A DNA stretch of 21,007 nt. Origin: Macrostomum lignano (lineage: Eukaryota). The stretch lies in the NCBI GenBank assembly GCA_002269645.1, contig NIVC01003735.1, positions 1-21,007 of the forward strand, read 5' to 3'. Shown one piece after another: positions 1 through 20,463 of the stretch. Every line of letters begins with the position of its first letter. The first letter of the stretch is position 1. Both the position numbers and the translations under genes were made by a program. The notes under the pieces were generated by a model, which worked only from the letters and a program-made list of their open reading frames with translations, searched no databases and was not told the DNA's origin.

Positions 1-604
1 GTGCAGGCAGTCAGTCTATTTGTGAATTTTCTGGGTGGATCTGAAGAAACCCGTCCGGCACAGGATTAAAGAGAAAGAGACGATCTGTTTTGGGTGAGTA
101 TTATCTGCTGTAGAAAGTATTGTACACCAGAGTAACTTGTGTTTACTTGGTAGAGCACAATTCAAAAGCAATGCAACAATCTCAGTGGCATTGTTGGGAC
201 ACAAGCTACAAACGCAATGAATAGTAAACACAGCCCAGCCTAGCTCAAGGCTAGTAATTTGTTGGGCATTTATTGGGACATTGCAGCCAGGCCTATTTTT
301 TGAACAGCATTTGTTGGGTCGCACTTATTGGGACAATACTGATTCTAATCGCGACTACTTCTGAGTTCTGACTTTTCAAAACAGACCCAGCATTAGTTGA
401 ACACGTTCTATTAAAGGGTTCCTTTATAGCCTATTAATGATTACTAAAGCAAGCCTATCTTAATTGATTTCTTTTCCTCGCAGATTCTGAAGTCAGCCAC
501 GCCAGCGACATGCCTAAGAGACAAGAATGCGCTTAACGATCAGCAGCGAGCATTCTGATCTCGCCGCTGCATCCGTCATTTGGTTCACTTGCTGCTCACA
601 AGCC

Positions 605-640
<36 letters not shown>

Positions 641-1260
641 AGCAGCAGCGCAGCAGCTCCGTGCAGGCAGTCAGTCTATTTGTGAATTTTCTGGTGGATC
701 TGAAGAAAACCCGTCCGGCACAGGATTAAAGAGAAAGAGACGATCTGTTTTGGGTGAGTATTATCTGCTGTAGAAGTATTGTACACCAGAGTACTTGTGT
801 TACTTGGTAGAGCACAATTCAAAAGCAATGCAACAATCTCAGTGGCATTGTTGGGACACAAGCTACAAACGCAATGAATAGTAAACACAGCCCAGCCTAG
901 CTCAAGGTAGTAATTTGTTGGCATTTATTGGGACATTGCAGCCAGGCCTATTTTTTGAACAGCATTTGTTGGGTCGCACTTATTGGGACAATACTGATTC
1001 TAATCGCGACTACTTCTGAGTTCTGACTTTTCAAAACAGACCCAGCATTAGTTGAACACGTTCTATTAAAGGGTTCCTTTATAGCCTATTAATGATTACT
1101 AAAGCAAGCCTATCTTAATTGATTTCTTTTCCTCGCAGATTCTGAAGTCAGCCACGCCAGCGACATGCCTAAGAGACAAGAATGCGCTTTAACGATCAGC
1201 AGCGAGCATTCTGATCTCGCCGCTGCATCCGTCATTTGGTTCACTTGCTGCTCACAAGCC

Positions 1261-1302
<42 letters not shown>

Positions 1303-3805
1303 GCTATCCGTGCAGGCAGTCAGTCTATTTGTGAATTTTCTGGTGGATCTGAAGAAAACCCGTCCGGCACAGGATTAAAGAGAAAGAGACGATCTGTTTT
1401 GGGTGAGTATTATCTGCTGTAGAAGTATTGTACACCAGAGTACTTGTGTTACTTGGTAGAGCACAATTCAAAAGCAATGCAACAATCTCAGTGGCATTGT
1501 TGGGACACAAGCTACAAACGCAATGAATAGTAAACACAGCCCAGCCTAGCTCAAGGCTAGTAATTTGTTGGGCATTTATTGGGACATTGCAGCCAGGCCT
1601 ATTTTTTGAACAGCATTTGTTGGGTCGCACTTATTGGACAATACTGATTCTAATCGCGACTACTTCTGAGTTCTGACTTTTCAAAACAGACCCAGCATTA
1701 GTTGAACACGTTCTATTAAAGGGTTCCTTTATAGCCTATTAATGATTACTAAAGCAAGCCTATCTTAATTGATTTCTTTTCCTCGCAGATTCTGAAGTCA
1801 GCCACGCCAGCGACATGCCTAAGAGACAAGAATGCGCTTTAACGATCAGCAGCGAGCATTCTGATCTCGCCGCTGCATCCGTCATTTGGTTCACTTGCTG
1901 CTCACAAGCCGCAGCAGCAGCAGCAGCAAGCAGCCGCTATCCGTGCAGGCAGTCAGTCTATTTGTGAATTTTCTGGTGATCTGAAGAAAACCCGTCCGGC
2001 ACAGGATTAAAGAGAAAGAGACGATCTGTTTTGGGTGAGTATTATCTGCTGTAGAAGTATTGTACACCAGAGTACTTGTGTTACTTGGTAGAGCACAATT
2101 CAAAAGCAATGCAACAATCTCAGTGGCATTGTTGGGACACAAGCTACAAACGCAATGAATAGTAAACACAGCCCAGCCTAGCTCAAGGCTAGTAATTTGT
2201 TGGGCATTTATTGGGACATTGCAGCCAGGCCTATTTTTTGAACAGCATTTGTTGGGTCGCACTTATTGGGACAATACTGATTCTAATCGCGACTACTTCT
2301 GAGTTCTGACTTTTCAAAACAGACCCAGCATTAGTTGAACACGTTCTATTAAAGGGTTCCTTTATAGCCTATTAATGATTACTAAAGCAAGCCTATCTTA
2401 ATTGATTTCTTTTCCTCGCAGATTCTGAAGTCAGCCACGCCAGCGACATGCCTAAGAGACAAGAATGCGCTTTAACGATCAGCAGCGAGCATTCTGATCT
2501 CGCCGCTGCATCCGTCATTTGGTTCACTTGCTGCTCACAAGCAGCGCAGCAGCAGCAGCAGCAGCAGCCGCTATCCGTGCAGGCAGTCAGTCTATTTGTG
2601 AATTTTCTGGTGGATCTGAAGAAAACCCGTCCGGCACAGGATTAAAGAGAAAGAGACGATCTGTTTTGGGTGAGTATTATCTGCTGTAGAAGTATTGTAC
2701 ACCAGAGTACTTGTGTTACTGGTAGAGCACAATTCAAAAGCAATGCAACAATCTCAGTGGCATTGTTGGGACACAAGCTACAAACGCAATGAATAGTAAA
2801 CACAGCCCAGCAGCCTAGCTCAAGGCTAGTAATTTGTTGGGCATTTATTGGGACATTGCAGCCAGGCCTATTTTTTGAACAGCATTTGTTGGGTCGCACT
2901 TATTGGGACAATACTGATTCTAATCGCGACTACTTCTGAGTTCTGACTTTTCAAAACAGACCCAGCATTAGTTGAACACGTTCTATTAAAGGGTTCCTTT
3001 ATAGCCTATTAATGATTACTAAAGCAAGCCTATCTTAATTGATTTCTTTTCCTCGCAGATTCTGAAGTCAGCCACGCCAGCGACATGCCTAAGAGACAAG
3101 AATGCGCTTTAACGATCAGCAGCGAGCATTCTGATCTCGCCGCTGCATCCGTCATTTGGTTCACTTGCTGCTCACAAGCCAGCAGCAGCAGCAGCAGCAG
3201 CAGCCGCTATCCGTGCAGGCAGTCAGTCTATTTGTGAATTTTCTGGTGGATCTGAAGAAAACCCGTCCGGCACAGGATTAAAGAGAAAGAGACGATCTGT
3301 TTTGGGTGAGTATTATCTGCTGTAGAAGTATTGTACACCAGAGTACTTGTGTTACTTGGTAGAGCACAATTCAAAAGCAATGCAACAATCTCAGTGGCAT
3401 TGTTGGGACACAAGCTACAAACGCAATGAATAGTAAACACAGCCCAGCCTAGCTCAAGGCTAGTAATTTGTTGGGCATTTATTGGGACATTGCAGCCAGG
3501 CCTATTTTTTGAACAGCATTTGTTGGGTCGCACTTATTGGGACAATACTGATTCTAATCGCGACTACTTCTGAGTTCTGACTTTTCAAAACAGACCCAGC
3601 ATTAGTTGAACACGTTCTATTAAAGGGTTCCTTTATAGCCTATTAATGATTACTAAAGCAAGCCTATCTTAATTGATTTCTTTTCCTCGCAGATTCTGAA
3701 GTCAGCACGCCAGCGACATGCCTAAGAGACAAGAATGCGCTTTAACGATCAGCAGCGAGCATTCTGATCTCGCCGCTGCATCCGTCATTTGGTTCACTTG
3801 CTGCT

Positions 3806-3843
<38 letters not shown>

Positions 3844-4447
3844 GCTATCCGTGCAGGCAGTCAGTCTATTTGTGAATTTTCTGGTGGATCTGAAGAAAAC
3901 CCGTCCGGCACAGGATTAAAGAGAAAGAGACGATCTGTTTTGGGTGAGTATTATCTGCTGTAGAAGTATTGTACACCAGAGTACTTGTGTTACCTGGTAG
4001 AGCACAATTCAAAAGCAATGCAACAATCTCAGTGGCATTGTTGGGACACAAGCTACAAACGCAATGAATAGTAAACACAGCCCAGCCTAGCTCAAGGCTA
4101 GTAATTTGTTGGGCATTTATTGGGACATTGCAGCCAGGCCTATTTTTTGAACAGCATTTGTTGGGTCGCACTTATTGGGACAATACTGATTCTAATCGCG
4201 ACTACTTCTGAGTTCTGACTTTTCAAAACAGACCCAGCATTAGTTGAACACGTTCTATTAAAGGGTTCCTTTATAGCCTATTAATGATTACTAAAGCAAG
4301 CCTATCTTAATTGATTTCTTTTCCTCGCAGATTCTGAAGTCAGCAACGCCAGCGACATGCCTAAGAGACAAGAATGCGCTTTAACGATCAGCAGCGAGCA
4401 TTCTGATCTCGCCGCTGCATCCGTCATTTGGTTCACTTGCTGCTCAC

Positions 4448-4479
<32 letters not shown>

Positions 4480-5711
4480 GCTATCCGTGCAGGCAGTCAG
4501 TCTATTTGTGAATTTTCTGGTGGATCTGAAGAAAACCCGTCCGGCACAGGATTAAAGAGAAAGAGACGATCTGTTTTGGGTGAGTATTATCTGCTGTAGA
4601 AGTATTGTACACCAGAGTACTTGTGTTACCTGGTAGAGCACAATTCAAAAGCAATGCAACAATCTCAGTGGCATTGTTGGGACACAAGCTACAAACGCAA
4701 TGAATAGTAAACACAGCCCAGCCTAGCTCAAGGCTAGTAATTTGTTGGGCATTTATTGGGACATTGCAGCCAGGCCTATTTTTTGAACAGCATTTGTTGG
4801 GTCGCACTTATTGGGACAATACTGATTCTAATCGCGACTACTTCTGAGTTCTGACTTTTCAAAACAGACCCAGCATTAGTTGAACACGTTCTATTAAAGG
4901 GTTCCTTTATAGCCTATTAATGATTACTAAAGCAAGCCTATCTTAATTGATTTCTTTTCCTCGCAGATTCTGAAGTCAGCACGCCAGCGACATGCCTAAG
5001 AGACAAGAATGCGCTTTAACGATCAGCAGCGAGCATTCTGATCTCGCCGCTGCATCCGTCATTTGGTTCACTTGCTGCTCACAAGCCGCAGCAGCAGCAG
5101 CAGCAGCAGCCGCTATCCGTGCAGGCAGTCAGTCTATTTGTGAATTTTCTGGTGGATCTGAAGAAAACCCGTCCGGCACAGGATTAAAGAGAAAGAGACG
5201 ATCTGTTTTGGGTGAGTATTATCTGCTGTAGAAGTATTGTACACCAGAGTACTTGTGTTACTGGTAGAGCACAATTCAAAAGCAATGCAACAATCTCAGT
5301 GGCATTGTTGGGACACAAGCTACAAACGCAATGAATAGTAAACACAGCCCAGCCTAGCTCAAGGCTAGTAATTTGTTGGGCATTTATTGGGACATTGCAG
5401 CCAGGCCTATTTTTTGAACAGCATTTGTTGGGTCGCACTTATTGGGACAATACTGATTCTAATCGCGACTACTTCTGAGTTCTGACTTTTCAAAACAGAC
5501 CCAGCATTAGTTGAACACGTTCTATTAAAGGGTTCCTTTATAGCCTATTAATGATTACTAAAGCAAGCCTATCTTAATTGATTTCTTTTCCTCGCAGATT
5601 CTGAAGTCAGCAACGCCAGCGACATGCCTAAGAGACAAGAATGCGCTTTAACGATCAGCAGCGAGCATTCTGATCTCGCCGCTGCATCCGTCATTTGGTT
5701 CACTTGCTGCT

Positions 5712-5750
<39 letters not shown>

Positions 5751-6984
5751 GCTATCCGTGCAGGCAGTCAGTCTATTTGTGAATTTTCTGGTGGATCTGA
5801 AGAAAACCCGTCCGGCACAGGATTAAAGAGAAAGAGACGATCTGTTTTGGGTGAGTATTATCTGCTGTAGAAGTATTGTACACCAGAGTACTTGTGTTAC
5901 TGGTAGAGCACAATTCAAAAGCAATGCAACAATCTCAGTGGCATTGTTGGGACACAAGCTACAAACGCAATGAATAGTAAACACAGCCCAGCCTAGCTCA
6001 AGGCTAGTAATTTGTTGGGCATTTATTGGGACATTGCAGCCAGGCCTATTTTTTGAACAGCATTTGTTGGGTCGCACTTATTGGGACAATACTGATTCTA
6101 ATCGCGACTACTTCTGAGTTCTGACTTTTCAAAACAGACCCAGCATTAGTTGAACACGTTCTATTAAAGGGTTCCTTTATAGCCTATTAATGATTACTAA
6201 AGCAAGCCTATCTTAATTGATTTCTTTTCCTCGCAGATTCTGAAGTCAGCACGCCAGCGACATGCCTAAGAGACAAGAATGCGCTTTAACGATCAGCAGC
6301 GAGCATTCTGATCTCGCCGCTGCATCCGTCATTTGGTTCACTTGCTGCTCACAAGCCGCAGCAGCAGCAGCAGCAGCAGCAGCCGCTATCCGTGCAGGCA
6401 GTCAGTCTATTTGTGAATTTTCTGGTGGATCTGAAGAAAACCCGTCCGGCACAGGATTAAAGAGAAAGAGACGATCTGTTTTGGGTGAGTATTATCTGCT
6501 GTAGAAGTATTGTACACCAGAGTACTTGTGTTACTGGTAGAGCACAATTCAAAAGCAATGCAACAATCTCAGTGGCATTGTTGGGACACAAGCTACAAAC
6601 GCAATGAATAGTAAACACAGCCCAGCCTAGCTCAAGGCTAGTAATTTGTTGGGCATTTATTGGGACATTGCAGCCAGGCCTATTTTTTGAACAGCATTTG
6701 TTGGGTCGCACTTATTGGGACAATACTGATTCTAATCGCGACTACTTCTGAGTTCTGACTTTTCAAAACAGACCCAGCATTAGTTGAACACGTTCTATTA
6801 AAGGGTTCCTTTATAGCCTATTAATGATTACTAAAGCAAGCCTATCTTAATTGATTTCTTTTCCTCGCAGATTCTGAAGTCAGCCACGCCAGCGACATGC
6901 CTAAGAGACAAGAATGCGCTTTAACGATCAGCAGCGAGCATTCTGATCTCGCCGCTGCATCCGTCATTTGGTTCACTTGCTGCT

Positions 6985-7023
<39 letters not shown>

Positions 7024-7626
7024 GCTATCCGTGCAGGCAGTCAGTCTATTTGTGAATTTTCTGGTGGATCTGAAGAAAACCCGTCCGGCACAGGATTAAA
7101 GAGAAAGAGACGATCTGTTTTGGGTGAGTATTATCTGCTGTAGAAGTATTGTACACCAGAGTACTTGTGTTACTGGTAGAGCACAATTCAAAAGCAATGC
7201 AACAATCTCAGTGGCATTGTTGGGACACAAGCTACAAACGCAATGAATAGTAAACACAGCCCAGCCTAGCTCAAGGCTAGTAATTTGTTGGGCATTTATT
7301 GGGACATTGCAGCCAGGCCTATTTTTTGAACAGCATTTGTTGGGTCGCACTTATTGGGACAATACTGATTCTAATCGCGACTACTTCTGAGTTCTGACTT
7401 TTCAAAACAGACCCAGCATTAGTTGAACACGTTCTATTAAAGGGTTCCTTTATAGCCTATTAATGATTACTAAAGCAAGCCTATCTTAATTGATTTCTTT
7501 TCCTCGCAGATTCTGAAGTCAGCCACGCCAGCGACATGCCTAAGAGACAAGAATGCGCTTTAACGATCAGCAGCGAGCATTCTGATCTCGCCGCTGCATC
7601 CGTCATTTGGTTCACTTGCTGCTCAC

Positions 7627-7661
<35 letters not shown>

Positions 7662-10171
7662 GCTATCCGTGCAGGCAGTCAGTCTATTTGTGAATTTTCT
7701 GGTGGATCTGAAGAAAACCCGTCCGGCACAGGATTAAAGAGAAAGAGACGATCTGTTTTGGGTGAGTATTATCTGCTGTAGAAGTATTGTACACCAGAGT
7801 ACTTGTGTTACTTGGTAGAGCACAATTCAAAAGCAATGCAACAATCTCAGTGGCATTGTTGGGACACAAGCTACAAACGCAATGAATAGTAAACACAGCC
7901 CAGCCTAGCTCAAGGCTAGTAATTTGTTGGGCATTTATTGGGACATTGCAGCCAGGCCTATTTTTTGAACAGCATTTGTTGGGTCGCACTTATTGGGACA
8001 ATACTGATTCTAATCGCGACTACTTCTGAGTTCTGACTTTTCAAAACAGACCCAGCATTAGTTGAACACGTTCTATTAAAGGGTTCCTTTATAGCCTATT
8101 AATGATTACTAAAGCAAGCCTATCTTAATTGATTTCTTTTCCTCGCAGATTCTGAAGTCAGCACGCCAGCGACATGCCTAAGAGACAAGAATGCGCTTTA
8201 ACGATCAGCAGCGAGCATTCTGATCTCGCCGCTGCATCCGTCATTTGGTTCACTTGCTGCTCACAAGCCAGCAGCAGCAGCAGCAGCAGCAGCCGCTATC
8301 CGTGCAGGCAGTCAGTCTATTTGTGAATTTTCTGGTGGATCTGAAGAAAACCCGTCCGGCACAGGATTAAAGAGAAAGAGACGATCTGTTTTGGGTGAGT
8401 ATTATCTGCTGTAGAAGTATTGTACACCAGAGTACTTGTGTTACTTGGTAGAGCACAATTCAAAAGCAATGCAACAATCTCAGTGGCATTGTTGGGACAC
8501 AAGCTACAAACGCAATGAATAGTAAACACAGCCCAGCCTAGCTCAAGGCTAGTAATTTGTTGGGCATTTATTGGGACATTGCAGCCAGGCCTATTTTTTG
8601 AACAGCATTTGTTGGGTCGCACTTATTGGGACAATACTGATTCTAATCGCGACTACTTCTGAGTTCTGACTTTTCAAAACAGACCCAGCATTAGTTGAAC
8701 ACGTTCTATTAAAGGGTTCCTTTATAGCCTATTAATGATTACTAAAGCAAGCCTATCTTAATTGATTTCTTTTCCTCGCAGATTCTGAAGTCAGCCACGC
8801 CAGCGACATGCCTAAGAGACAAGAATGCGCTTTAACGATCAGCAGCGAGCATTCTGATCTCGCCGCTGCATCCGTCATTTGGTTCACTTGCTGCTCACAA
8901 GCGCAGCAGCAGCAGCAGCAGCAGCAGCCGCTATCCGTGCAGGCAGTCAGTCTATTTGTGAATTTTCTGGTGGATCTGAAGAAAACCCGTCCGGCACAGG
9001 ATTAAAGAGAAAGAGACGATCTGTTTTGGGTGAGTATTATCTGCTGTAGAAGTATTGTACACCAGAGTACTTGTGTTACTGGTAGAGCACAATTCAAAAG
9101 CAATGCAACAATCTCAGTGGCATTGTTGGGACACAAGCTACAAACGCAATGAATAGTAAACACAGCCCAGCCTAGCTCAAGGCTAGTAATTTGTTGGGCA
9201 TTTATTGGGACATTGCAGCCAGGCCTATTTTTTGAACAGCATTTGTTGGGTCGCACTTATTGGGACAATACTGATTCTAATCGCGACTACTTCTGAGTTC
9301 TGACTTTTCAAAACAGACCCAGCATTAGTTGAACACGTTCTATTAAAGGGTTCCTTTATAGCCTATTAATGATTACTAAAGCAAGCCTATCTTAATTGAT
9401 TTCTTTTCCTCGCAGATTCTGAAGTCAGCCACGCCAGCGACATGCCTAAGAGACAAGAATGCGCTTTAACGATCAGCAGCGAGCATTCTGATCTCGCCGC
9501 TGCATCCGTCATTTGGTTCACTTGCTGCTCACAAGCCGCAGCAGCAGCAGCAGCAGCAGCAGCAGCCGCTATCCGTGCAGGCAGTCAGTCTATTTGTGAA
9601 TTTTCTGGTGGATCTGAAGAAAACCCGTCCGGCACAGGATTAAAGAGAAAGAGACGATCTGTTTTGGGTGAGTATTATCTGCTGTAGAAGTATTGTACAC
9701 CAGAGTACTTGTGTTACTTGGTAGAGCACAATTCAAAAGCAATGCAACAATCTCAGTGGCATTGTTGGGACACAAGCTACAAACGCAATGAATAGTAAAC
9801 ACAGCCCAGCCTAGCTCAAGGCTAGTAATTTGTTGGGCATTTATTGGGACATTGCAGCCAGGCCTATTTTTTGAACAGCATTTGTTGGGTCGCACTTATT
9901 GGGACAATACTGATTCTAATCGCGACTACTTCTGAGTTCTGACTTTTCAAAACAGACCCAGCATTAGTTGAACACGTTCTATTAAAGGGTTCCTTTATAG
10001 CCTATTAATGATTACTAAAGCAAGCCTATCTTAATTGATTTCTTTTCCTCGCAGATTCTGAAGTCAGCCACGCCAGCGACATGCCTAAGAGACAAGAATG
10101 CGCTTTAACGATCAGCAGCGAGCATTCTGATCTCGCCGCTGCATCCGTCATTTGGTTCACTTGCTGCTCAC

Positions 10172-10203
<32 letters not shown>

Positions 10204-10803
10204 GCTATCCGTGCAGGCAGTCAGTCTATTTGTGAATTTTCTGGTGGATCTGAAGAAAACCCGTCCGGCACAGGATTAAAGAGAAAGAGACGATCTGTTT
10301 TGGGTGAGTATTATCTGCTGTAGAAGTATTGTACACCAGAGTACTTGTGTTACTGGTAGAGCACAATTCAAAAGCAATGCAACAATCTCAGTGGCATTGT
10401 TGGGACACAAGCTACAAACGCAATGAATAGTAAACACAGCCCAGCCTAGCTCAAGGCTAGTAATTTGTTGGGCATTTATTGGGACATTGCAGCCAGGCCT
10501 ATTTTTTGAACAGCATTTGTTGGGTCGCACTTATTGGGACAATACTGATTCTAATCGCGACTACTTCTGAGTTCTGACTTTTCAAAACAGACCCAGCATT
10601 AGTTGAACACGTTCTATTAAAGGGTTCCTTTATAGCCTATTAATGATTACTAAAGCAAGCCTATCTTAATTGATTTCTTTTCCTCGCAGATTCTGAAGTC
10701 AGCCACGCCAGCGACATGCCTAAGAGACAAGAATGCGCTTTAACGATCAGCAGCGAGCATTCTGATCTCGCCGCTGCATCCGTCATTTGGTTCACTTGCT
10801 GCT

Positions 10804-10844
<41 letters not shown>

Positions 10845-11447
10845 GCTATCCGTGCAGGCAGTCAGTCTATTTGTGAATTTTCTGGTGGATCTGAAGAAAA
10901 CCCGTCCGGCACAGGATTAAAGAGAAAGAGACGATCTGTTTTGGGTGAGTATTATCTGCTGTAGAAGTATTGTACACCAGAGTACTTGTGTTACTTGGTA
11001 GAGCACAATTCAAAAGCAATGCAACAATCTCAGTGGCATTGTTGGGACACAAGCTACAAACGCAATGAATAGTAAACACAGCCCAGCCTAGCTCAAGGCT
11101 AGTAATTTGTTGGGCATTTATTGGGACATTGCAGCCAGGCCTATTTTTTGAACAGCATTTGTTGGGTCGCACTTATTGGGACAATACTGATTCTAATCGC
11201 GACTACTTCTGAGTTCTGACTTTTCAAAACAGACCCAGCATTAGTTGAACACGTTCTATTAAAGGGTTCCTTTATAGCCTATTAATGATTACTAAAGCAA
11301 GCCTATCTTAATTGATTTCTTTTCCTCGCAGATTCTGAAGTCAGCACGCCAGCGACATGCCTAAGAGACAAGAATGCGCTTTAACGATCAGCAGCGAGCA
11401 TTCTGATCTCGCCGCTGCATCCGTCATTTGGTTCACTTGCTGCTCAC

Positions 11448-11485
<38 letters not shown>

Positions 11486-14400
11486 GCTATCCGTGCAGGC
11501 AGTCAGTCTATTTGTGAATTTTCTGGTGGATCTGAAGAAAACCCGTCCGGCACAGGATTAAAGAGAAAGAGACGATCTGTTTTGGGTGAGTATTATCTGC
11601 TGTAGAAGTATTGTACACCAGAGTACTTGTGTTACTTGGTAGAGCACAATTCAAAAGCAATGCAACAATCTCAGTGGCATTGTTGGGACACAAGCTACAA
11701 ACGCAATGAATAGTAAACACAGCCCAGCCTAGCTCAAGGCTAGTAATTTGTTGGGCATTTATTGGGACATTGCAGCCAGGCCTATTTTTTGAACAGCATT
11801 TGTTGGGTCGCACTTATTGGGACAATACTGATTCTAATCGCGACTACTTCTGAGTTCTGACTTTTCAAAACAGACCCAGCATTAGTTGAACACGTTCTAT
11901 TAAAGGGTTCCTTTATAGCCTATTAATGATTACTAAAGCAAGCCTATCTTAATTGATTTCTTTTCCTCGCAGATTCTGAAGTCAGCCACGCCAGCGACAT
12001 GCCTAAGAGACAAGAATGCGCTTTAACGATCAGCAGCGAGCATTCTGATCTCGCCGCTGCATCCGTCATTTGGTTCACTTGCTGCTCACAAGCCGCAGCA
12101 GCAGCAGCAGCAGCAGCCGCTATCCGTGCAGGCAGTCAGTCTATTTGTGAATTTTCTGGTGGATCTGAAGAAAACCCGTCCGGCACAGGATTAAAGAGAA
12201 AGAGACGATCTGTTTTGGGTGAGTATTATCTGCTGTAGAAGTATTGTACACCAGAGTACTTGTGTTACTGGTAGAGCACAATTCAAAAGCAATGCAACAA
12301 TCTCAGTGGCATTGTTGGGACACAAGCTACAAACGCAATGAATAGTAAACACAGCCCAGCCTAGCTCAAGGCTAGTAATTTGTTGGGCATTTATTGGGAC
12401 ATTGCAGCCAGGCCTATTTTTTGAACAGCATTTGTTGGGTCGCACTTATTGGGACAATACTGATTCTAATCGCGACTACTTCTGAGTTCTGACTTTTCAA
12501 AACAGACCCAGCATTAGTTGAACACGTTCTATTAAAGGGTTCCTTTATAGCCTATTAATGATTACTAAAGCAAGCCTATCTTAATTGATTTCTTTTCCTC
12601 GCAGATTCTGAAGTCAGCCACGCCAGCGACATGCCTAAGAGACAAGAATGCGCTTTAACGATCAGCAGCGAGCATTCTGATCTCGCCGCTGCATCCGTCA
12701 TTTGGTTCACTTGCTGCTCACAAGCCGCAGCAGCAGCAGCAGCAGCAGCAGCAGCCGCTATCCGTGCAGGCAGTCAGTCTATTTGTGAATTTTCTGGTGG
12801 ATCTGAAGAAAACCCGTCCGGCACAGGATTAAAGAGAAAGAGACGATCTGTTTTGGGTGAGTATTATCTGCTGTAGAAGTATTGTACACCAGAGTACTTG
12901 TGTTACTTGGTAGAGCACAATTCAAAAGCAATGCAACAATCTCAGTGGCATTGTTGGGACACAAGCTACAAACGCAATGAATAGTAAACACAGCCCAGCC
13001 TAGCTCAAGGCTAGTAATTTGTTGGGCATTTATTGGGACATTGCAGCCAGGCCTATTTTTTGAACAGCATTTGTTGGGTCGCACTTATTGGGACAATACT
13101 GATTCTAATCGCGACTACTTCTGAGTTCTGACTTTTCAAAACAGACCCAGCATTAGTTGAACACGTTCTATTAAAGGGTTCCTTTATAGCCTATTAATGA
13201 TTACTAAAGCAAGCCTATCTTAATTGATTTCTTTTCCTCGCAGATTCTGAAGTCAGCCACGCCAGCGACATGCCTAAGAGACAAGAATGCGCTTTAACGA
13301 TCAGCAGCGAGCATTCTGATCTCGCCGCTGCATCCGTCATTTGGTTCACTTGCTGCTCACAAGCCAGCAGCAGCAGCAGCAGCAGCAGCCGCTATCCGTG
13401 CAGGCAGTCAGTCTATTTGTGAATTTTCTGGTGGATCTGAAGAAAACCCGTCCGGCACAGGATTAAAGAGAAAGAGACGATCTGTTTTGGGTGAGTATTA
13501 TCTGCTGTAGAAGTATTGTACACCAGAGTACTTGTGTTACTGGTAGAGCACAATTCAAAAGCAATGCAACAATCTCAGTGGCATTGTTGGGACACAAGCT
13601 ACAAACGCAATGAATAGTAAACACAGCCCAGCCTAGCTCAAGGCTAGTAATTTGTTGGGCATTTATTGGGACATTGCAGCCAGGCCTATTTTTTGAACAG
13701 CATTTGTTGGGTCGCACTTATTGGGACAATACTGATTCTAATCGCGACTACTTCTGAGTTCTGACTTTTCAAAACAGACCCAGCATTAGTTGAACACGTT
13801 CTATTAAAGGGTTCCTTTATAGCCTATTAATGATTACTAAAGCAAGCCTATCTTAATTGATTTCTTTTCCTCGCAGATTCTGAAGTCAGCCACGCCAGCG
13901 ACATGCCTAAGAGACAAGAATGCGCTTTAACGATCAGCAGCGAGCATTCTGATCTCGCCGCTGCATCCGTCATTTGGTTCACTTGCTGCTCACAAGCCAG
14001 CAGCAGCAGCAGCAGCAGCAGCCGCTATCCGTGCAGGCAGTCAGTCTATTTGTGAATTTTCTGGTGGATCTGAAGAAAACCCGTCCGGCACAGGATTAAA
14101 GAGAAAGAGACGATCTGTTTTGGGTGAGTATTATCTGCTGTAGAAGTATTGTACACCAGAGTACTTGTGTTACTTGGTAGAGCACAATTCAAAAGCAATG
14201 CAACAATCTCAGTGGCATTGTTGGGACACAAGCTACAAACGCAATGAATAGTAAACACAGCCCAGCCTAGCTCAAGGCTAGTAATTTGTTGGGCATTTAT
14301 TGGGACATTGCAGCCAGGCCTATTTTTTGAACAGCATTTGTTGGGTCGCACTTATTGGGACAATACTGATTCTAATCGCGACTACTTCTGAGTTCTGACT

Positions 14401-16643
14401 TTTCAAAACAGACCCAGCATTAGTTGAACACGTTCTATTAAAGGGTTCCTTTATAGCCTATTAATGATTACTAAAGCAAGCCTATCTTAATTGATTTCTT
14501 TTCCTCGCAGATTCTGAAGTCAGCCACGCCAGCGACATGCCTAAGAGACAAGAATGCGCTTTAACGATCAGCAGCGAGCATTCTGATCTCGCCGCTGCAT
14601 CCGTCATTTGGTTCACTTGCTGCTCACAAGCCGCAGCAGCAGCAGCAGCAGCAGCCGCTATCCGTGCAGGCAGTCAGTCTATTTGTGAATTTTCTGGTGG
14701 ATCTGAAGAAAACCCGTCCGGCACAGGATTAAAGAGAAAGAGACGATCTGTTTTGGGTGAGTATTATCTGCTGTAGAAGTATTGTACACCAGAGTACTTG
14801 TGTTACTGGTAGAGCACAATTCAAAAGCAATGCAACAATCTCAGTGGCATTGTTGGGACACAAGCTACAAACGCAATGAATAGTAAACACAGCCCAGCCT
14901 AGCTCAAGGCTAGTAATTTGTTGGGCATTTATTGGGACATTGCAGCCAGGCCTATTTTTTGAACAGCATTTGTTGGGTCGCACTTATTGGGACAATACTG
15001 ATTCTAATCGCGACTACTTCTGAGTTCTGACTTTTCAAAACAGACCCAGCATTAGTTGAACACGTTCTATTAAAGGGTTCCTTTATAGCCTATTAATGAT
15101 TACTAAAGCAAGCCTATCTTAATTGATTTCTTTTCCTCGCAGATTCTGAAGTCAGCCACGCCAGCGACATGCCTAAGAGACAAGAATGCGCTTTAACGAT
15201 CAGCAGCGAGCATTCTGATCTCGCCGCTGCATCCGTCATTTGGTTCACTTGCTGCTCACAAGCCGCAGCAGCAGCAGCAGCAGCAGCAGCAGCCGCTATC
15301 CGTGCAGGCAGTCAGTCTATTTGTGAATTTTCTGGTGGATCTGAAGAAAACCCGTCCGGCACAGGATTAAAGAGAAAGAGACGATCTGTTTTGGGTGAGT
15401 ATTATCTGCTGTAGAAGTATTGTACACCAGAGTACTTGTGTTACTTGGTAGAGCACAATTCAAAAGCAATGCAACAATCTCAGTGGCATTGTTGGGACAC
15501 AAGCTACAAACGCAATGAATAGTAAACACAGCCCAGCCTAGCTCAAGGCTAGTAATTTGTTGGGCATTTATTGGGACATTGCAGCCAGGCCTATTTTTGA
15601 ACAGCATTTGTTGGGTCGCACTTATTGGGACAATACTGATTCTAATCGCGACTACTTCTGAGTTCTGACTTTTCAAAACAGACCCAGCATTAGTTGAACA
15701 CGTTCTATTAAAGGGTTCCTTTATAGCCTATTAATGATTACTAAAGCAAGCCTATCTTAATTGATTTCTTTTCCTCGCAGATTCTGAAGTCAGCCACGCC
15801 AGCGACATGCCTAAGAGACAAGAATGCGCTTTAACGATCAGCAGCGAGCATTCTGATCTCGCCGCTGCATCCGTCATTTGGTTCACTTGCTGCTCACAAG
15901 CCGCAGCAGCAGCAGCAGCAGCAGCCGCTATCCGTGCAGGCAGTCAGTCTATTTGTGAATTTTCTGGTGGATCTGAAGAAAACCCGTCCGGCACAGGATT
16001 AAAGAGAAAGAGACGATCTGTTTTGGGTGAGTATTATCTGCTGTAGAAGTATTGTACACCAGAGTACTTGTGTTACTTGGTAGAGCACAATTCAAAAGCA
16101 ATGCAACAATCTCAGTGGCATTGTTGGGACACAAGCTACAAACGCAATGAATAGTAAACACAGCCCAGCCTAGCTAAAGGCTAGTAATTTGTTGGGCATT
16201 TATTGGGACATTGCAGCCAGGCCTATTTTTTGAACAGCATTTGTTGGGTCGCACTTATTGGGACAATACTGATTCTAATCGCGACTACTTCTGAGTTCTG
16301 ACTTTTCAAAACAGACCCAGCATTAGTTGAACACGTTCTATTAAAGGGTTCCTTTATAGCCTATTAATGATTACTAAAGCAAGCCTATCTTAATTGATTT
16401 CTTTTCCTCGCAGATTCTGAAGTCAGCCACGCCAGCGACATGCCTAAGAGACAAGAATACGCTTTAACGATCAGCAGCGAGCATTCTGATCTCGCCGCTG
16501 CATCCGTCATTTGGTTCACTTGCTGCTGCCAAGCTGCAGCAGCATCAGCAGCAGCAGCAGCAGCAGCAGCAGCCGCTAACTGTGCAGCAGTCAGTTATTT
16601 CATGAGTTTTCTGGCGGAGCTGGTTATTTTTTTAATTTTCTGA
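1..16643 (+). CDS. Candidate multi-exon gene (5' part outside window) made of tandem symmetric phase-1 exons encoding DSEVSHASDMPKRQECALTISSEHSDLAAASVIWFTCCSQ(A)nIRAGSQSICEFSGGSEENPSGTGLKRKRRSVL; no recognised homologue
   Basis: Every unit has an AG acceptor with a polypyrimidine tract and a GTGAGT donor. The donor-side G plus acceptor-side AT forms an in-frame GAT (Asp). The other two frames stop early (CTT TAA; TTC TGA). Frame-intact exons: 1139-1402, 4331-4579, 7510-7761, 9416-9667, 10055-10303, 10690-10944, 11973-12218, 12605-12856, 14511-14756, 15143-15394, 15781-16026. The other 14 full copies have 1-nt indels. There is no transcript evidence. Confidence 0.55.
1139..1402 (+). CDS. Representative intact repeat exon (264 nt, 88 codons, 16-Ala tract), phase 1 to phase 1
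   Basis: It is preceded by TTTCTTTTCCTCGCAG (ending 1138) and followed by GTGAGTA (from 1403). The length is divisible by 3 and there is no stop in the frame containing the ATG at 1165. Confidence 0.55.
1261..1299 (+). repeat. (GCA)n trinucleotide tract embedded in every unit; representative copy
   Basis: A GCA run is visible in each unit. The ORF track shows 10-16 consecutive Ala depending on the copy. Confidence 0.97.
1403..1788 (+). other. Representative repeated GT-AG intron (~386-387 nt)
   Basis: It starts GTGAGTA and ends CTTAATTGATTTCTTTTCCTCGCAG, a branch-point-like CTTAAT followed by a pyrimidine tract and CAG. It is repeated almost identically in every unit. Confidence 0.65.
16414..16643 (+). 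CDS. Diverged terminal copy; candidate last coding exon ending AAAANCAAVSYFMSFLAELVIFLIF*
   Basis: It has the same acceptor and the 26-nt spacing to the ATG at 16440. It carries several substitutions, loses homology after about 16620, has no GTGAGT donor, and stops at TGA 16641-16643. Confidence 0.45.
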
Positions 16644-16718: not shown

Positions 16719-16724
16719 AATAAA
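16719..16724 (+). promoter_or_regulatory. Candidate polyadenylation signal AATAAA
   Basis: AATAAA lies about 75 nt after the terminal stop. It is followed by T/GT-rich sequence (TTTGCTTTTTATAGTATTTGTGTATATTCTTTTT, about 16758-16791). AATAAA is common in AT-rich DNA. Confidence 0.35.
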
Positions 16725-16794: not shown

Positions 16795-17660
16795 GCTATG
16801 CTGGAATTGTTGGGACAGCCCCATCCACACTGGCTATGGTGGAATTGTTGGGACAGCCCCATCCACACTGGCTATGGTGGAATTGTTGGGACAGCCCCAT
16901 CCACACTGGCTATGCTGGAATTGTTGGGACAGCCCCATCCACACTGGCTATGCTGGAATTGTTGGGACAGCCCCATCCACACTGGCTATGGTGGAATTGT
17001 TGGGACAGCCCCATCCACACTGGCTATGCTGGAATTGTTGGGACAGCCCCATCCACACTGGCTATGCTGGAATTGTTGGGACAGCCCCATCCACACTGGC
17101 TATGCTGGAATTGTTGGGACAGCCCCATCCACACTGGCTATGGTGGAATTGTTGGGACAGCCCCATCCACACTGGCTATGCTGGAATTGTTGGGACAGCC
17201 CCATCCACACTGGCTATGGTGGAATTGTTGGGACAGCCCCATCCACACTGGCTATGCTGGAATTGTTGGGACAGCCCCATCCACACTGGCTATGGTGGAA
17301 TTGTTGGGACAGCCCTATCCACACTGGCTATGGTGGAATTGTTGGGACAGCCCTATCCACACTGGCTATGGTGGAATTGTTGGGACAGCCCTATCCACAC
17401 TGGCTATGCTGGAATTGTTGGGACAGCCCCATCCACACTGGCTATGCTGGAATTGTTGGGACAGCCCTATCCACACTGGCTATGGTGGAATTGTTGGGAC
17501 AGCCCCATCCACACTGGCTATGCTGGAATTGTTGGGACAGCCCCATCCACACTGGCTATGCTGGAATTGTTGGGACAGCCCTATCCACACTGGCTATGGT
17601 GGAATTGTTGGGACAGCCCTATCCACACTGGCTATGGTGGAATTGTTGGGACAGCCCCAT
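16795..17660. repeat. 38-bp minisatellite, ~23 copies: GCTATG(C/G)TGGAATTGTTGGGACAGCCC(C/T)ATCCACACTG
   Basis: Read directly from the sequence. The 38-aa periodicity of the three overlapping ORFs equals 3 x 38 nt. There are two recurrent variant positions and no spacers. Confidence 0.97.
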
Positions 17661-18277
17661 ACTATAGTGTGTGCTGGCTTCTGCTATAGTGTGGTTCATT
17701 TCCGCATCCTTTTACGTAGCATTCTGTGGGTCCGAATAGCTGACATGTACCTTTTGAGTAATTCTAGTGATTGTGTCATAATCAATAAAGTACATTTTTA
17801 TGAACAGTGGAGTTTCGCTACAGAATTGTTTTTTCCCAGTGGCACTAAATGTAGCAAATTTTGTTTATTCAGATCGTAAAATTTTTTTGATATGTGTCAA
17901 TGTCGTTTGTCTTCGATAACCTTAAAGTCCCTTGCCATTTACCATCCTGTCTTCTATAATCTATGATCGCTGAAATTATCTGGTGAAATTTGACGCGCTG
18001 ATATTATTGCCTTAGTGGAATTCAGCAAGACACCAGGGTTTTTAAATTCTGTTTTAGACAAGTATACATGTACAATCTGTTGTGAGTTCAATGCACCTCG
18101 AAAAATGCTTTCCAACTGTTTTCAGTAAGCCAAAAGCATGTTGTCAATAAAAATCTATTTGGTGGGTTGAAAATTGCCTGTGTGGGGACGTGTGTGTGTG
18201 TGATTTTTCGTGTGTCGGAGCAGTCCCAATATGTGCAAGTTTTTGCACACTTGGCCAATAAGTGCCTCGTGCACGTT

Positions 18278-18419
18278 TGTGTGTGTGTGTGTGTGTGTCT
18301 GTCTGTCTGCCTGTCTGTCCGTCTGTCTTTCTGCCTGTCTTAGTGTCTGTCTGTCTGCCTGTCTGTCTGTCTGCCTGTCTGTCTTTCTGTCTGTCTGTCT
18401 GTCTGCCTGTCTGTATTAG

Positions 18420-18490
<71 letters not shown>
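18278..18490. repeat. Compound microsatellite: (GT)n, then degenerate (GTCT/GCCT)n, then pure (GTCT)n at about 18421-18490
   Basis: Read directly from the sequence. Confidence 0.97.
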
Positions 18491-18494
<4 letters not shown>

Positions 18495-18945
18495 TTTTCT
18501 GTGTATTTGGCTGACTTGGTGCCCGTCTTTATCATATCATACTCCAAATGATACTTTCTATTTTCCTTTTACATGCAATGAAAAATCAATAACCAAAGAA
18601 CTGGATCTGTCAGCAGAGACAAGTCCTTTATTTGCGATTATAAATTATCACAGACATCTTGTTCGAGAATATAAATAATCAAATAAAGTAAAATGTCAGT
18701 AAGAATTTTGGCATTCAGGTTTTTCTGCAATTATCAGTTAAAATTATAGAATCACAATGCTGTGTGTACGTCGCAGATAAACTTTTTGAAATTTGACAAA
18801 GGTAAAATTCCAAATGGCAAGGAATTACATGTAAAATACGAATTAATAAATTTAGCTATACTACTGCATTGAATAATATATTATATCACGAAAAATGGTA
18901 GAGAGGCACTTGCTTTAGAAAGACCGAAAGGAGAATCCTAAAAAT
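18419..18945 (+). repeat. Copy 1 of a ~500-bp diverged direct duplication (GTCT tract plus AT-rich flank)
   Basis: It shares identical blocks with 20385-20892, for example AAGAATTTTGGCATTCAGGTTTTTCTGCAA (18701-18730 vs 20656-20685) and AAGGTAAAATTCCAAATGGC (18799-18818 vs 20761-20780). Boundaries are approximate. Confidence 0.85.

Positions 18946-20385: not shown

Positions 20386-20463
<78 letters not shown>

What the first reader, a model, noticed from the sequence alone, without database searches (positions are those of the whole stretch)
1..16643. The 637-bp 'satellite' is an amplified exon+intron cassette that splices into one long repeat protein
Seen: each unit has a strong acceptor (CTTAAT...TTTCTTTTCCTCGCAG) and a GTGAGT donor. 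The enclosed exon is a multiple of 3 in intact copies whatever the GCA count. Only one frame is open, and the junction G|AT rebuilds an in-frame Asp codon. Established: symmetric same-phase exons can be tandemly duplicated without disturbing the frame. Inference: this is the 3' part of a gene with at least 26 near-identical exons (over 2000 aa if all are used). Single-exon ORF calling shows only 79-85-aa fragments, and repeat maskers would probably hide it.
Basis: partly seen in the sequence, partly recalled or inferred. Interest (0 to 1): 0.8.

Follow-up and report, generated by a model that had tools for sequence, protein, structure and literature searches.

The report
Spliced exon–intron repeat array in flatworm
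The 636-bp "satellite" in this Macrostomum lignano (flatworm) window is a tandemly amplified exon-plus-intron cassette that public RNA-based gene models already show spliced unit to unit, but it is one copy of a young element dispersed to at least 16 contigs and shows no sign of selection for a protein.

Summary
Observation confirmed. All 26 units carry the acceptor CCTCGCAG and the donor TTGG|GTGAGT. Only one of six frames is open across the exon, and the junction gives ...RSVL|DSEVS....

Interpretation partly supported. The window is Macrostomum lignano DNA. Gene models in the Mlig_3_7 annotation, built from RNA-seq and de novo transcripts, already contain exactly this junction. The last unit is a true terminal exon with a stop at 16641-16643 and AATAAA at 16719-16724.

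Three results weaken the idea of one gene encoding more than 2000 aa.
- As assembled, only 11 of 25 complete exons here are intact, the longest intact run is 3, and the longest open stretch of the fully spliced RNA is 388 codons.
- The array sits in a discrete element: a 2.46-kb left arm, the array, the terminal exon, a 38-bp satellite and a 0.62-kb right arm ending at window 18285. It recurs with identical boundaries but different flanks on at least 10 fetched contigs, and annotated models place it on at least 16.
- Exon substitutions look neutral (5 synonymous, 11 nonsynonymous, 3 stop). The exon diverges more than the intron between copies, and one array has spread a nonsense codon through 11 of 16 units.

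One cleanly assembled copy (L004) is open for 726 codons, so a modular, secretory-looking polyprotein remains possible but unproven. No relatives were found outside this species.

The parts
1..93 (+). 3' part of a repeat exon cut by the window edge; broken as assembled
   Evidence: Ends at donor TTGG|GTGAGT. The translation contains a stop caused by local 1-bp indels.
484..753 (+). Repeat exon 1 (270 nt); length is a multiple of 3 but the frame is shifted internally and hits a stop
1139..1402 (+). Repeat exon 2 (264 nt); intact; 16 Ala
1789..2034 (+). Repeat exon 3 (246 nt); internal shift and stop
2422..2669 (+). Repeat exon 4 (248 nt); frameshift at the edge of the GCA tract
3059..3305 (+). 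Repeat exon 5 (247 nt); frameshift
3693..3943 (+). Repeat exon 6 (251 nt); frameshift (AGCCAC>AGCAC)
4331..4579 (+). Repeat exon 7 (249 nt); intact
4967..5211 (+). Repeat exon 8 (245 nt); frameshift
5598..5850 (+). Repeat exon 9 (253 nt); frameshift
6237..6484 (+). Repeat exon 10 (248 nt); frameshift
6871..7123 (+). Repeat exon 11 (253 nt); frameshift
7510..7761 (+). Repeat exon 12 (252 nt); intact
8149..8394 (+). Repeat exon 13 (246 nt); two compensating shifts with a stop between them
8782..9029 (+). Repeat exon 14 (248 nt); frameshift
9416..9667 (+). Repeat exon 15 (252 nt); intact; used as the reference module
9668..10054 (+). Representative intron (387 nt), GTGAGT...TTAAT...TTTCTTTTCCTCGCAG. 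It carries TGTTGGGAC and TTATTGGGAC motifs and a 21-nt inverted copy of the element's left subterminal sequence.
10055..10303 (+). Repeat exon 16 (249 nt); intact
10690..10944 (+). Repeat exon 17 (255 nt); intact
11332..11585 (+). Repeat exon 18 (254 nt); frameshift
11973..12218 (+). Repeat exon 19 (246 nt); intact
12605..12856 (+). Repeat exon 20 (252 nt); intact
13244..13490 (+). Repeat exon 21 (247 nt); frameshift
13877..14123 (+). Repeat exon 22 (247 nt); frameshift
14511..14756 (+). Repeat exon 23 (246 nt); intact
15143..15394 (+). Repeat exon 24 (252 nt); intact
15781..16026 (+). Repeat exon 25 (246 nt); intact
16414..16643 (+). Coding part of the terminal exon. It follows the module up to the Ala tract, then diverges and has no donor. 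The stop TGA is at 16641-16643.
   Evidence: The homologous terminal exon is used in NCBI model P0002.
16719..16724 (+). AATAAA polyadenylation signal in the 3' UTR
   Evidence: Read directly from the sequence.
16795..17660 (+). 38-bp satellite, 22.8 copies, part of the same dispersed element. It shares TGG(A/C)ATTGTTGGGACA with the intron.
   Evidence: The corresponding stretch is far shorter in other copies (about 180 bp in L001 and about 105 bp in L002).
17661..18285 (+). Right arm of the element (about 0.62 kb), 98.6-99.6% identical in six other copies. The common right boundary ...CTCGTGCACGTTTG(TG)n lies at about 18285.
18232..18249 (.). Palindrome TGTGCAAG-TT-TTTGCACA near the right end of the element
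   Evidence: Read directly from the sequence.

Best explanation
The 636-bp repeat is a tandemly amplified exon-intron cassette: a phase 1-1 exon of about 246-255 nt and an intron of about 387 nt. It lies inside a discrete, young, multicopy element of the Macrostomum lignano genome.

Order of the element: (TG)n, a 2.46-kb left arm, a truncated first unit with its own acceptor, N cassettes, a terminal exon with stop and AATAAA, a 38-bp satellite, a 0.62-kb right arm, (TG)n.

Shown:
- The arrays carry canonical splice sites.
- Public transcript-derived models join each donor to the next unit's acceptor, giving a modular reading frame: ...DSEVSHASDMPKRQECALTISSEHSDLAAASVIWFTCCSQ(A)nIRAGSQSICEFSGGSEENPSGTGLKRKRRSVL....
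- The last exon ends the frame.
- At least one well-assembled copy is open through the whole spliced array.

Inferred:
- The cassette arose from a small secreted-protein gene. Each module starts with a Met followed by a signal-peptide-like stretch, MPKRQE...LAAASVIWFTCCSQAAAA.
- Unequal crossing-over expands and homogenises the array, and the whole element is copied to new sites by an unknown route.
- If the spliced RNA is translated from the first in-frame Met, it would give a secretory-type polyprotein of variable length with furin-type RKRR and KR sites between modules.
- The sequence shows no constraint on that protein, so it is best seen as a recently born, possibly non-functional, coding repeat rather than a conserved giant protein.
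- Most 1-bp frameshifts in this window are probably assembly errors, but this is not proven.
For: Species and prior annotation: all real hits are M. lignano models carrying the predicted junction.

RNA basis of the NCBI models: PMC5730564. Model boundaries lie in mid-exon and each model spans two junctions.

Splice motifs match the species consensus. One frame of six is open, and 0.25% of random units pass the cassette test.

Terminal exon, stop and AATAAA. The terminal exon is used in P0002.

Dispersed element: the same left arm (95.5-97.5% identity by BLAST) and right part (96-99.6% by BLAST; 98.6-99.6% for the arm proper), with identical boundaries but different flanks, occur on at least 10 contigs. 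Further models sit on other contigs.

Whole-array ORF of 726 codons in L004. Cleanly assembled arrays are 5/6, 8/9, 7/7 and 10/13 intact.

Youth and neutrality:
- 19 exon substitution events: 5 synonymous, 11 nonsynonymous, 3 stop, against an expected synonymous share of 22%.
- Variant density is 0.088 per site in the exon and 0.070 in the intron.
- Between copies the exon consensus diverges 0.96% and the intron 0.31%.
- TGG>TAG is spread through 11 of 16 units in L003.

UniProt's automatic name for models that start at MPKRQ is 'Secreted protein'.
Against: - I saw no RNA reads. Splicing rests on public gene models and the published description of how they were built.
- 59 of 147 exons across 11 arrays are broken, including 14 of 25 here. 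If these breaks are real, most transcripts carry premature stops.
- No initiator ATG in the module frame and no 5' exon was found upstream of the first unit. The spliced-leader ATG would be out of frame (own reading).
- The element's mode of spread is unknown. A terminal inverted repeat is not supported above shuffled controls, there is no transposase-size ORF, and any target-site duplication is masked by (TG)n.
- The neutrality test rests on few events, some of which may be sequencing errors.
- The structure model is uninformative (pLDDT 42).
Confidence: 0.6

Rival explanations
1. One reading: this is the 3' part of one genuine protein-coding gene whose 26 or more identical exons are all used, giving a functional repeat protein of more than 2000 aa. 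All frameshifts are assembly errors.
For: - The junction, phase and single open frame are confirmed.
- Transcript-based models use the junction.
- A terminal exon and poly(A) signal are present.
- L004 is open for 726 codons through all of its 9 exons.
- The breaks in this window are 1-bp indels at a homopolymer and at the edges of the repeat tract. Intron indels rise in the same 'messy' arrays, as expected of long-read consensus errors.
Against: - Only 11 of 25 exons are intact here, and the longest open stretch is 388 codons.
- No start was found.
- The substitution pattern is neutral and the exon is less conserved than the intron.
- A nonsense substitution, which is not an indel error, is fixed in most units of L003.
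- The locus is one of many dispersed copies.
- There is no homologue outside the species among 1.84 billion representative proteins.
- No Pfam domain is detected.
Confidence: 0.2
2. Each unit is a small gene of its own. The array is transcribed as a polycistron, the 'acceptor' receives the spliced leader, and each mRNA encodes a secreted peptide of about 80 aa: MPKRQ...KRKRRSVLGEYYLL*, reading 6 codons into the 'intron'.
For: - Each module begins with a Met followed by a signal-peptide-like stretch.
- The unspliced frame stops 6 codons after the donor.
- An ATTAAA lies about 70 nt before the acceptor.
- About 30% of M. lignano genes are trans-spliced and operons are common.
- An acceptor without an upstream donor is enough for trans-splicing.
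Against: - A perfect GTGAGT donor lies upstream of every acceptor, which by the same rule favours cis-splicing.
- Transcript-derived models join unit to unit.
- None of the 48 retrieved proteins ends in GEYYLL.
- Model boundaries are not at acceptors or in the intron.
- The leader's ATG joined to ATTCTGAAG... opens a different frame that stops after 18 codons (own translation of the junction; leader sequence).
Confidence: 0.07
3. This is an ordinary non-coding satellite. The splice-like motifs and the open frame are fortuitous or leftovers of a captured gene fragment, and the gene models are artefacts of multi-mapping reads or of read-through from host genes.
For: - The repeat is dispersed at many loci, homogenised, and in one copy lies in the intron of a myosin gene on the same strand.
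- Exon evolution is neutral and the intron is better conserved than the exon.
- 40% of exons are broken.
- All models are 'partial'.
Against: - The joint occurrence of splice sites, symmetric phase and an open frame is rare by chance (0.25%).
- A dedicated terminal exon with stop and AATAAA follows every array.
- Model P0002 has an Ala tract shorter than the genomic copy it is placed on. This suggests it was built from a real spliced transcript that came from another copy.
Confidence: 0.1

Closest known systems
Coding VNTRs made of exon-intron cassettes, e.g. the kringle IV type 2 repeat of human LPA (from memory, not tested here); tandem exon duplication in general
   Same: A head-to-tail repeat unit holds complete exon(s) plus intron(s). 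The phase is symmetric, so any copy number stays in frame. Copy number differs between copies or alleles. Short-read assemblies and annotations collapse or fragment the array.
   Different: - Here the unit is a single 250-nt exon and a 387-nt intron.
- The encoded module has no recognised domain.
- The whole gene-like unit is itself dispersed to many loci.
- No protein-level constraint is detectable.
Mobile or dispersed elements that carry internal tandem repeats and seed satellites: Tetris in Drosophila virilis (PMC4079207), pearl/CvA MITEs and Helentron-borne repeats in bivalves (PMC5139131, PMC7492417)
   Same: Discrete multicopy units with fixed ends hold an internal array whose copy number varies between insertions. 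Short motifs are shared between the ends and the internal repeats (TTGGGAC, CCAATAAGTGC). The transitions to the flanking DNA are abrupt.
   Different: - The internal repeat here is spliceable and has an open frame and a terminal exon.
- The hallmarks of those families (clear TIRs, Helitron ends, a transposase) were not found.
- Both ends lie in (TG)n.
Multi-copy prohormone/polyprotein precursors with dibasic processing sites (from memory)
   Same: Repeated modules are separated by KR and RKRR sites. There are acidic spacers and a signal-peptide-like N-terminus if translation starts at MPKRQ.
   Different: - Every module, not only the first, contains the signal-like hydrophobic stretch.
- There is no amidation Gly before the basic sites.
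- The peptide is not conserved in other species.
- There is one module per exon, not many per exon.
Exon shuffling by phase 1-1 symmetric modules (Patthy; from memory)
   Same: The cassette is a phase 1-1 exon flanked by intron sequence. In at least one case it is inserted into an intron of a host gene in the sense orientation (L004).
   Different: There is no evidence here that host transcripts include the cassette exons.

Membership tests
Tandemly duplicated exon-intron cassette (coding VNTR) | Canonical acceptor and donor in every unit | tested here: met
   26 of 26 units. The motifs match the species consensus.
Tandemly duplicated exon-intron cassette (coding VNTR) | Symmetric phase and one frame open across the exon | tested here: met
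   Phase 1-1, and 1 of 6 frames open in intact units.
Tandemly duplicated exon-intron cassette (coding VNTR) | Unit-to-unit junction present in RNA | tested here: met
   The evidence is indirect. RNA-seq- and transcript-derived NCBI models contain RSVL|(D/A)SEVS twice per model. No reads were inspected.
Tandemly duplicated exon-intron cassette (coding VNTR) | Frame uninterrupted through the array | tested here: inconclusive
   The window has 11 of 25 exons intact, L004 has 9 of 9 and 726 open codons, and overall 88 of 147 are intact. Assembly error cannot be separated from real mutation.
Functional protein-coding gene | Purifying selection on the reading frame | tested here: not met
   5 synonymous, 11 nonsynonymous and 3 stop events; exon divergence 0.96% against intron 0.31%. 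A nonsense allele is homogenised in L003.
Functional protein-coding gene | Start codon or 5' exon in frame | tested here: not met
   There is no in-frame ATG between the last upstream stop and the first unit in L001, and no annotated 5' exon. The first in-frame Met is the MPKRQ of unit 2.
Functional protein-coding gene | Homologues in other taxa or a known domain | tested here: not met
   Only M. lignano hits were found, plus one spurious bacterial PKD protein. Pfam hits are all below cut-off.
Satellite DNA | Long head-to-tail arrays, homogenised, at several loci | tested here: met
   At least 26 units here and 7 to 19 or more at other loci, with units 97.5-99.2% identical to the window consensus.
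Satellite DNA | Non-coding | tested here: inconclusive
   An open modular frame and spliced models argue against, but no constraint on the frame is seen.
TIR DNA transposon (autonomous or not) | Many copies with identical ends in different genomic contexts | tested here: met
   At least 6 different left flanks and at least 6 different right flanks with the same boundaries.
TIR DNA transposon (autonomous or not) | Terminal inverted repeats | tested here: inconclusive
   The best alignment of the left end with the reverse complement of the right end scores 24, equal to the maximum of 300 shuffles.
TIR DNA transposon (autonomous or not) | Target-site duplication | tested here: inconclusive
   Both ends abut (TG)n, which hides any short duplication.
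TIR DNA transposon (autonomous or not) | Transposase ORF | tested here: not met
   The longest ORF in the 2.46-kb left arm is 143 aa. A non-autonomous element is not excluded.
Helitron/Helentron | 5' TC and 3' CTRR ends with a hairpin 10-12 nt from the 3' end (criteria from memory) | tested here: not met
   The ends read TTTGTGCA... and ...GCACGTTTG, and the palindrome lies about 36-53 nt from the end.
SL trans-spliced operon of small genes | Leader added at each unit's acceptor and poly(A) site in each spacer | not testable with these tools
   This needs leader-containing and 3'-end reads. The indirect evidence is against it: models join units in cis and their boundaries are not at acceptors.
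Prohormone-type polyprotein | N-terminal signal peptide, repeated peptides flanked by dibasic sites, conserved peptides | tested here: inconclusive
   KR and KRKRR sites are present in every module. The label 'Secreted protein' is an automatic one only. The N-terminus is undefined and there is no conservation.

The most novel reading that the evidence does not exclude
A mobile-like, dispersed element of a flatworm carries an expandable array of phase 1-1 exon cassettes. The array is transcribed, spliced and translated into a secreted, furin-processed polyprotein of variable length. When the element lands in sense orientation in a host intron (as in the myosin gene at L004), it could donate in-frame exons to host genes. 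That would be a natural vehicle for making and spreading new repeat proteins.
Probability: 0.15. Interest if true: 0.7.

Novelty: new member of a known kind. Interest (0 to 1): 0.4.

Why it matters
It is a clear case of sequence that repeat finders would call a satellite, and that a repeat masker might hide, yet which is a spliced, frame-preserving exon array. Annotation pipelines cut it into dozens of 'partial hypothetical proteins' (at least 39 gene IDs in one cluster).

The new point is that the whole gene-like unit is a discrete dispersed element. This links three processes usually studied apart: satellite expansion, dispersal of repeats, and the birth of repeat proteins by exon duplication.

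For M. lignano users there are practical consequences. The arrays break assemblies, inflate gene counts, and sit inside introns of real genes. Whether a protein is made is directly testable with existing RNA-seq, long-read cDNA and proteomics.

Tried and rejected
- **Rfam scan of the whole window:** no family matched, so this is not an RNA-gene array.
- **Pfam on a single module and on the three-module model P0002:** nothing above the cut-offs.
- **phmmer of one module against 1.84 billion representatives:** only M. lignano proteins, one spurious bacterial PKD protein (P0047), and one diverged module, P0048.
- **Locating P0048:** its locus could not be fetched and it is not in any fetched locus, so no dN/dS against a diverged copy was possible.
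- **AlphaFold2 on P0004 without an alignment:** pLDDT 42, so no fold search was run.
- **Literature search for the gene IDs Mlig026960, Mlig003618 and Mlig029855:** none found. The search for a described Macrostomum satellite found nothing relevant.
- **Terminal inverted repeats:** not above shuffled controls. Helitron ends are absent.
- **Spliced-leader ATG as start codon:** it is in the wrong frame at the first-unit acceptor. There it would open a 56-codon frame ending before the exon end. It is also in the wrong frame at the unit acceptors (leader sequence; frames).
- **Exon against intron indel rate as a test of selection:** 1.00 against 1.47 per kb per unit. This is not decisive, because assembly errors would give the same picture.
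- **The window as the same insertion as L002:** rejected. They share the terminal-exon type, but the right flanks differ.
Full report
**What is in the window**

Positions 1-16413 hold 26 head-to-tail units with a period of 631-660 bp. Each has the acceptor ...TTTCTTTTCCTCGCAG and, about 250 nt later, the donor TTGG|GTGAGT. This bounds 25 complete exons of 245-270 nt, a 5'-truncated exon (1-93) and a last unit (16414 onward) that has no donor.

The units are more than 99% alike. Only 54 of 671 alignment columns vary, mostly around the (GCA)n tract. With the phase-1 base added, intact exons read DSEVSHASDMPKRQECALTISSEHSDLAAASVIWFTCCSQ(A)7-16IRAGSQSICEFSGGSEENPSGTGLKRKRRSVL.

Only this one of the six frames is free of stops. 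Because the units are copies, the evidence counts once. In 20,000 random units of the same first-order composition, 50 (0.25%) had a comparable acceptor, donor, length divisible by 3 and open frame. The donor and acceptor fit the GT[G/A]AG and CAG motifs reported for M. lignano cis-introns (PMC8629364). Rfam finds nothing in the window.

The last unit follows the module up to the Ala tract and then diverges. It reaches TGA at 16641-16643 and is followed by AATAAA at 16719-16724. That makes it a terminal exon with a 3' UTR.

**Whose DNA it is, and what is already known**

A three-module query found 25 proteins, all from the flatworm Macrostomum lignano. Many contain the predicted junction ...KRKRRSVL|DSEVS..., or ...RSVL|ASEVS... 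in a variant whose exon starts with C.

The UniProt entries come from the older ML2 annotation. The NCBI BOX15_ entries belong to assembly Mlig_3_7 (GCA_002269645.1). Its annotation was built from STAR-mapped RNA-seq assembled with StringTie/TACO and from BLAT-mapped de novo transcripts, with ORFs called by TransDecoder (PMC5730564).

Three details fit models built from real spliced transcripts rather than ab initio prediction:
- The coding ranges of these models start and stop in mid-exon, at unit offset about 213 and then at offset 116 two exons further on. Each model therefore represents a contig of about 390 nt with two junctions that breaks at the variable Ala tract.
- Model P0002 uses the terminal exon and its stop.
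- P0002 carries an Ala tract shorter than the genomic copy it is placed on, so it appears to come from another copy.

I could not inspect reads, so the evidence for splicing is indirect. All the models are 'partial hypothetical proteins'. One cluster alone carries gene numbers up to g39. No paper in the library mentions these gene IDs.

**The frame in this window**

As assembled, 11 of 25 complete exons are intact. Eleven have lengths that are not a multiple of 3, and three have compensating shifts with a stop between them. The longest run of intact exons is three. The fully spliced 6589-nt RNA has a longest open stretch of 388 codons. 'Over 2000 aa' therefore cannot be read from this sequence.

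The breaks are 1-bp changes at two hot spots: AGCCAC>AGCAC and the edges of the (GCA)n tract.

Across 11 arrays, 88 of 147 exons are intact.
- Some arrays are clean: L001 5/6, L002 8/9, L004 7/7, L008 10/13.
- Others are not: L003 3/16, L012 6/17, and the window.
- The arrays that are not clean also have more 1-bp indels in their introns, as expected of long-read consensus errors.

In L004 the whole spliced array, 9 exons, is open for 726 codons from the first acceptor to the stop. A continuous modular ORF therefore exists in at least one copy, and many breaks in the window are probably errors. That is an inference, not a result.

**The array belongs to a dispersed element**

Twelve loci were fetched from Mlig_3_7, representing 10 contigs. 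Wherever the stored sequence reaches that far, they show the same architecture. A 2.46-kb left arm is 95.5-97.5% identical between copies by BLAST and differs by 1.5-2.1% when only substitutions are counted. It is followed by a truncated first unit with its own acceptor (cacgcacag|GTTCATCC...). Then come 7 to 19 or more cassettes, the terminal exon, the 38-bp satellite and a 0.62-kb right arm that is 98.6-99.6% identical.

The boundaries are the same to the base: (TG)n-TTTGTGCATTAGGCATTTCTTGGGAC... on the left and ...CTCGTGCACGTTTG-(TG)n on the right. The right boundary is at window 18285. The DNA beyond the boundaries differs: there are at least 6 different left flanks and at least 6 different right flanks.

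The genomic contexts also differ:
- One copy lies within the span of a myosin heavy-chain gene model on the same strand, presumably in an intron (L004).
- One lies within the span of a TIR-domain gene model on the opposite strand (L002).
- One lies next to a cathepsin-L-like gene (L008).

Further models sit on other contigs, bringing the total to at least 16. The window's right flank matches none of the fetched copies, so it is yet another insertion, and it has the longest array seen.

These are not whole-genome-duplication paralogues. The unit as a whole has been copied to new places. How is unknown:
- The left arm has no ORF over 143 aa.
- A terminal inverted repeat is not better than shuffled controls.
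- Helitron ends are absent.
- Any target-site duplication is hidden by the (TG)n.

Short motifs recur in the arms, in every intron and in the 38-bp satellite. TGTTGGGAC occurs 49 times in the window against 0.4 expected, although nearly all of these are repeat copies. A 21-nt stretch of the intron is a 90% inverted copy of the left subterminal sequence.

**Is the frame under selection?**

I found no sign of it.
- Among 144 aligned units, and outside the Ala tract, there are 19 distinct substitution events in the exon (0.088 per site) and 27 in the intron (0.070 per site).
- The exon events are 5 synonymous, 11 nonsynonymous and 3 nonsense, spread evenly over codon positions (6, 7, 6). A synonymous share of 22% is expected without selection.
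- Between the consensus units of different copies, the exon differs by 0.96% and the intron by 0.31% (the Ala tract was not masked in this comparison).
- The terminal exon plus UTR differs most, at 2.9%.
- In L003 a TGG>TAG change in the module frame has spread to 11 of 16 units. That is a substitution, not an indel artefact.

With copies this young, an open frame is expected with or without selection.

There is no homologue outside M. lignano among 5.8 billion clustered proteins or 1.84 billion representative proteins. No Pfam domain is detected, and the structure model is not confident (pLDDT 42). A single diverged module (P0048, 52% identical, UniProt A0A1I8FV09) shows that older copies exist. 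Its DNA could not be reached.

**How it most likely works**

Shown: the cassette structure, its phase, the terminal exon, the dispersed element, and unit-to-unit junctions in transcript-derived models.

Inferred:
- Unequal crossing-over expands and homogenises the arrays. Array length and Ala-tract length differ between copies.
- The pre-mRNA is cis-spliced from each GTGAGT to the next acceptor.
- The first in-frame Met is the MPKRQ of the second exon, because the module frame has no ATG upstream.
- That Met is followed by a signal-peptide-like stretch. UniProt automatically names such models 'Secreted protein'.
- Every module ends in KRKRR and also contains a KR site. If translated, the product would be a secretory polyprotein cut into pieces of about 80 aa.
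- Every module, not only the first, contains the Met and the signal-like stretch. This suggests the cassette descends from the first coding exon of a small secreted-protein gene.

The M. lignano spliced leader ends in ATG. Joined to the first-unit acceptor or to the unit acceptors, that ATG opens other, short frames, so it does not supply the start.

**Rivals**

- The 'one small gene per unit, trans-spliced' reading is attractive, given the Met and signal stretch in each unit and a stop 6 codons into the intron. The donor upstream of each acceptor and the cis-joined models argue against it.
- A purely non-coding satellite with accidental motifs is unlikely, given the 0.25% chance estimate and the dedicated terminal exon.

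**Comparison with known systems and verdict**

In mechanism this resembles coding VNTRs built from exon-intron cassettes and tandem exon duplication. In genomic behaviour it resembles dispersed elements with internal tandem repeats: Tetris (PMC4079207) and the bivalve pearl/CvA and Helentron-borne repeats (PMC5139131, PMC7492417). It fails or leaves open the defining tests of any named transposon class.

It is a new member of known kinds rather than a new kind. The most useful new fact is that the 'gene' is a young, dispersed, multicopy element whose coding function is unproven.

Noticed in passing
window 16795-17660: A 38-bp satellite (22.8 copies, 97% matches) lies directly after the 3' UTR. 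It alternates GCTATGCTGG and GCTATGGTGG variants and contains ATTGTTGGGACA, the same motif as the cassette intron. The corresponding stretch is only about 180 bp (L001) or about 105 bp (L002) in other copies of the element.
   Followed up: partly
window 18280-18502 and 20386-20462: (TG)n/(TGTC)n microsatellites begin exactly at the right boundary of the element. In most copies both element ends abut TG repeats, which may point to microsatellite-mediated insertion or recombination.
   Followed up: partly
window 18954-20196: A 25-bp satellite (49.8 copies) is organised as a 50-bp dimer (CAGCCAGGCTCTCATTTTGGCGCCA / CAGACAGG(G/C)GCTCATTTTGGCGCCA). It has a distinct variant block in its last 300 bp or so. 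It is unrelated to the cassette.
   Followed up: no
window 18530-18827 versus 20481-20789: Two direct copies (77-85% identical over the matched 71- and 79-nt blocks) each follow a (TGTC)n tract about 1.95 kb apart and bracket the 25-bp satellite. They look like another composite repeat.
   Followed up: no
window 16540-16643 (terminal exon): Relative to the L001-type terminal exon (...IRAGSQLIDEFSGRAGYFLSF*), the copy here lacks one G (GCAGGCAG>GCAGCAG) and has T7 where L001 has T6. The frame therefore shifts for about 17 codons and returns to the same TGA. The same exon type in L002 and L004 has a stop inside that stretch.
   Followed up: partly
L003 2449-11476 (NIVC01001277.1): A nonsense change, TGG>TAG in the module frame, is present in 11 of 16 units of this array. 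This is concerted evolution spreading a stop codon.
   Followed up: yes
L004 5424-14794 (NIVC01001124.1): A complete element with 9 exons, all in frame (726 codons), lies inside a myosin heavy-chain gene model on the same strand. L002's copy lies inside a TIR-domain gene model on the opposite strand.
   Followed up: partly
unit consensus, all loci: Between copies of the element the cassette intron is better conserved (0.31% divergence) than the exon (0.96%), the left arm (1.8%) and the terminal exon plus UTR (2.9%). I have no explanation. The causes could be homogenisation between loci or a constraint on the intron motifs.
   Followed up: partly
UniProt A0A1I8FV09 (P0048), locus not retrievable: A diverged module (52% identical; ...TINSEHSDIADALATSCLLAAQEQQRTLLMQTGCSQSIDDLSCGAKDNSSGKGLKRKRRSVL) is spliced to a canonical ASEVSNASDMP exon. 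This is the only sign of an older relative of the cassette.
   Followed up: partly
window 601-657 and 1257-1301: The two 5'-most complete units have the longest (GCA)n tracts (19 and 15 repeats, against 8-13 elsewhere). The first 1.3 kb or so carries more small indels than the rest of the array.
   Followed up: no
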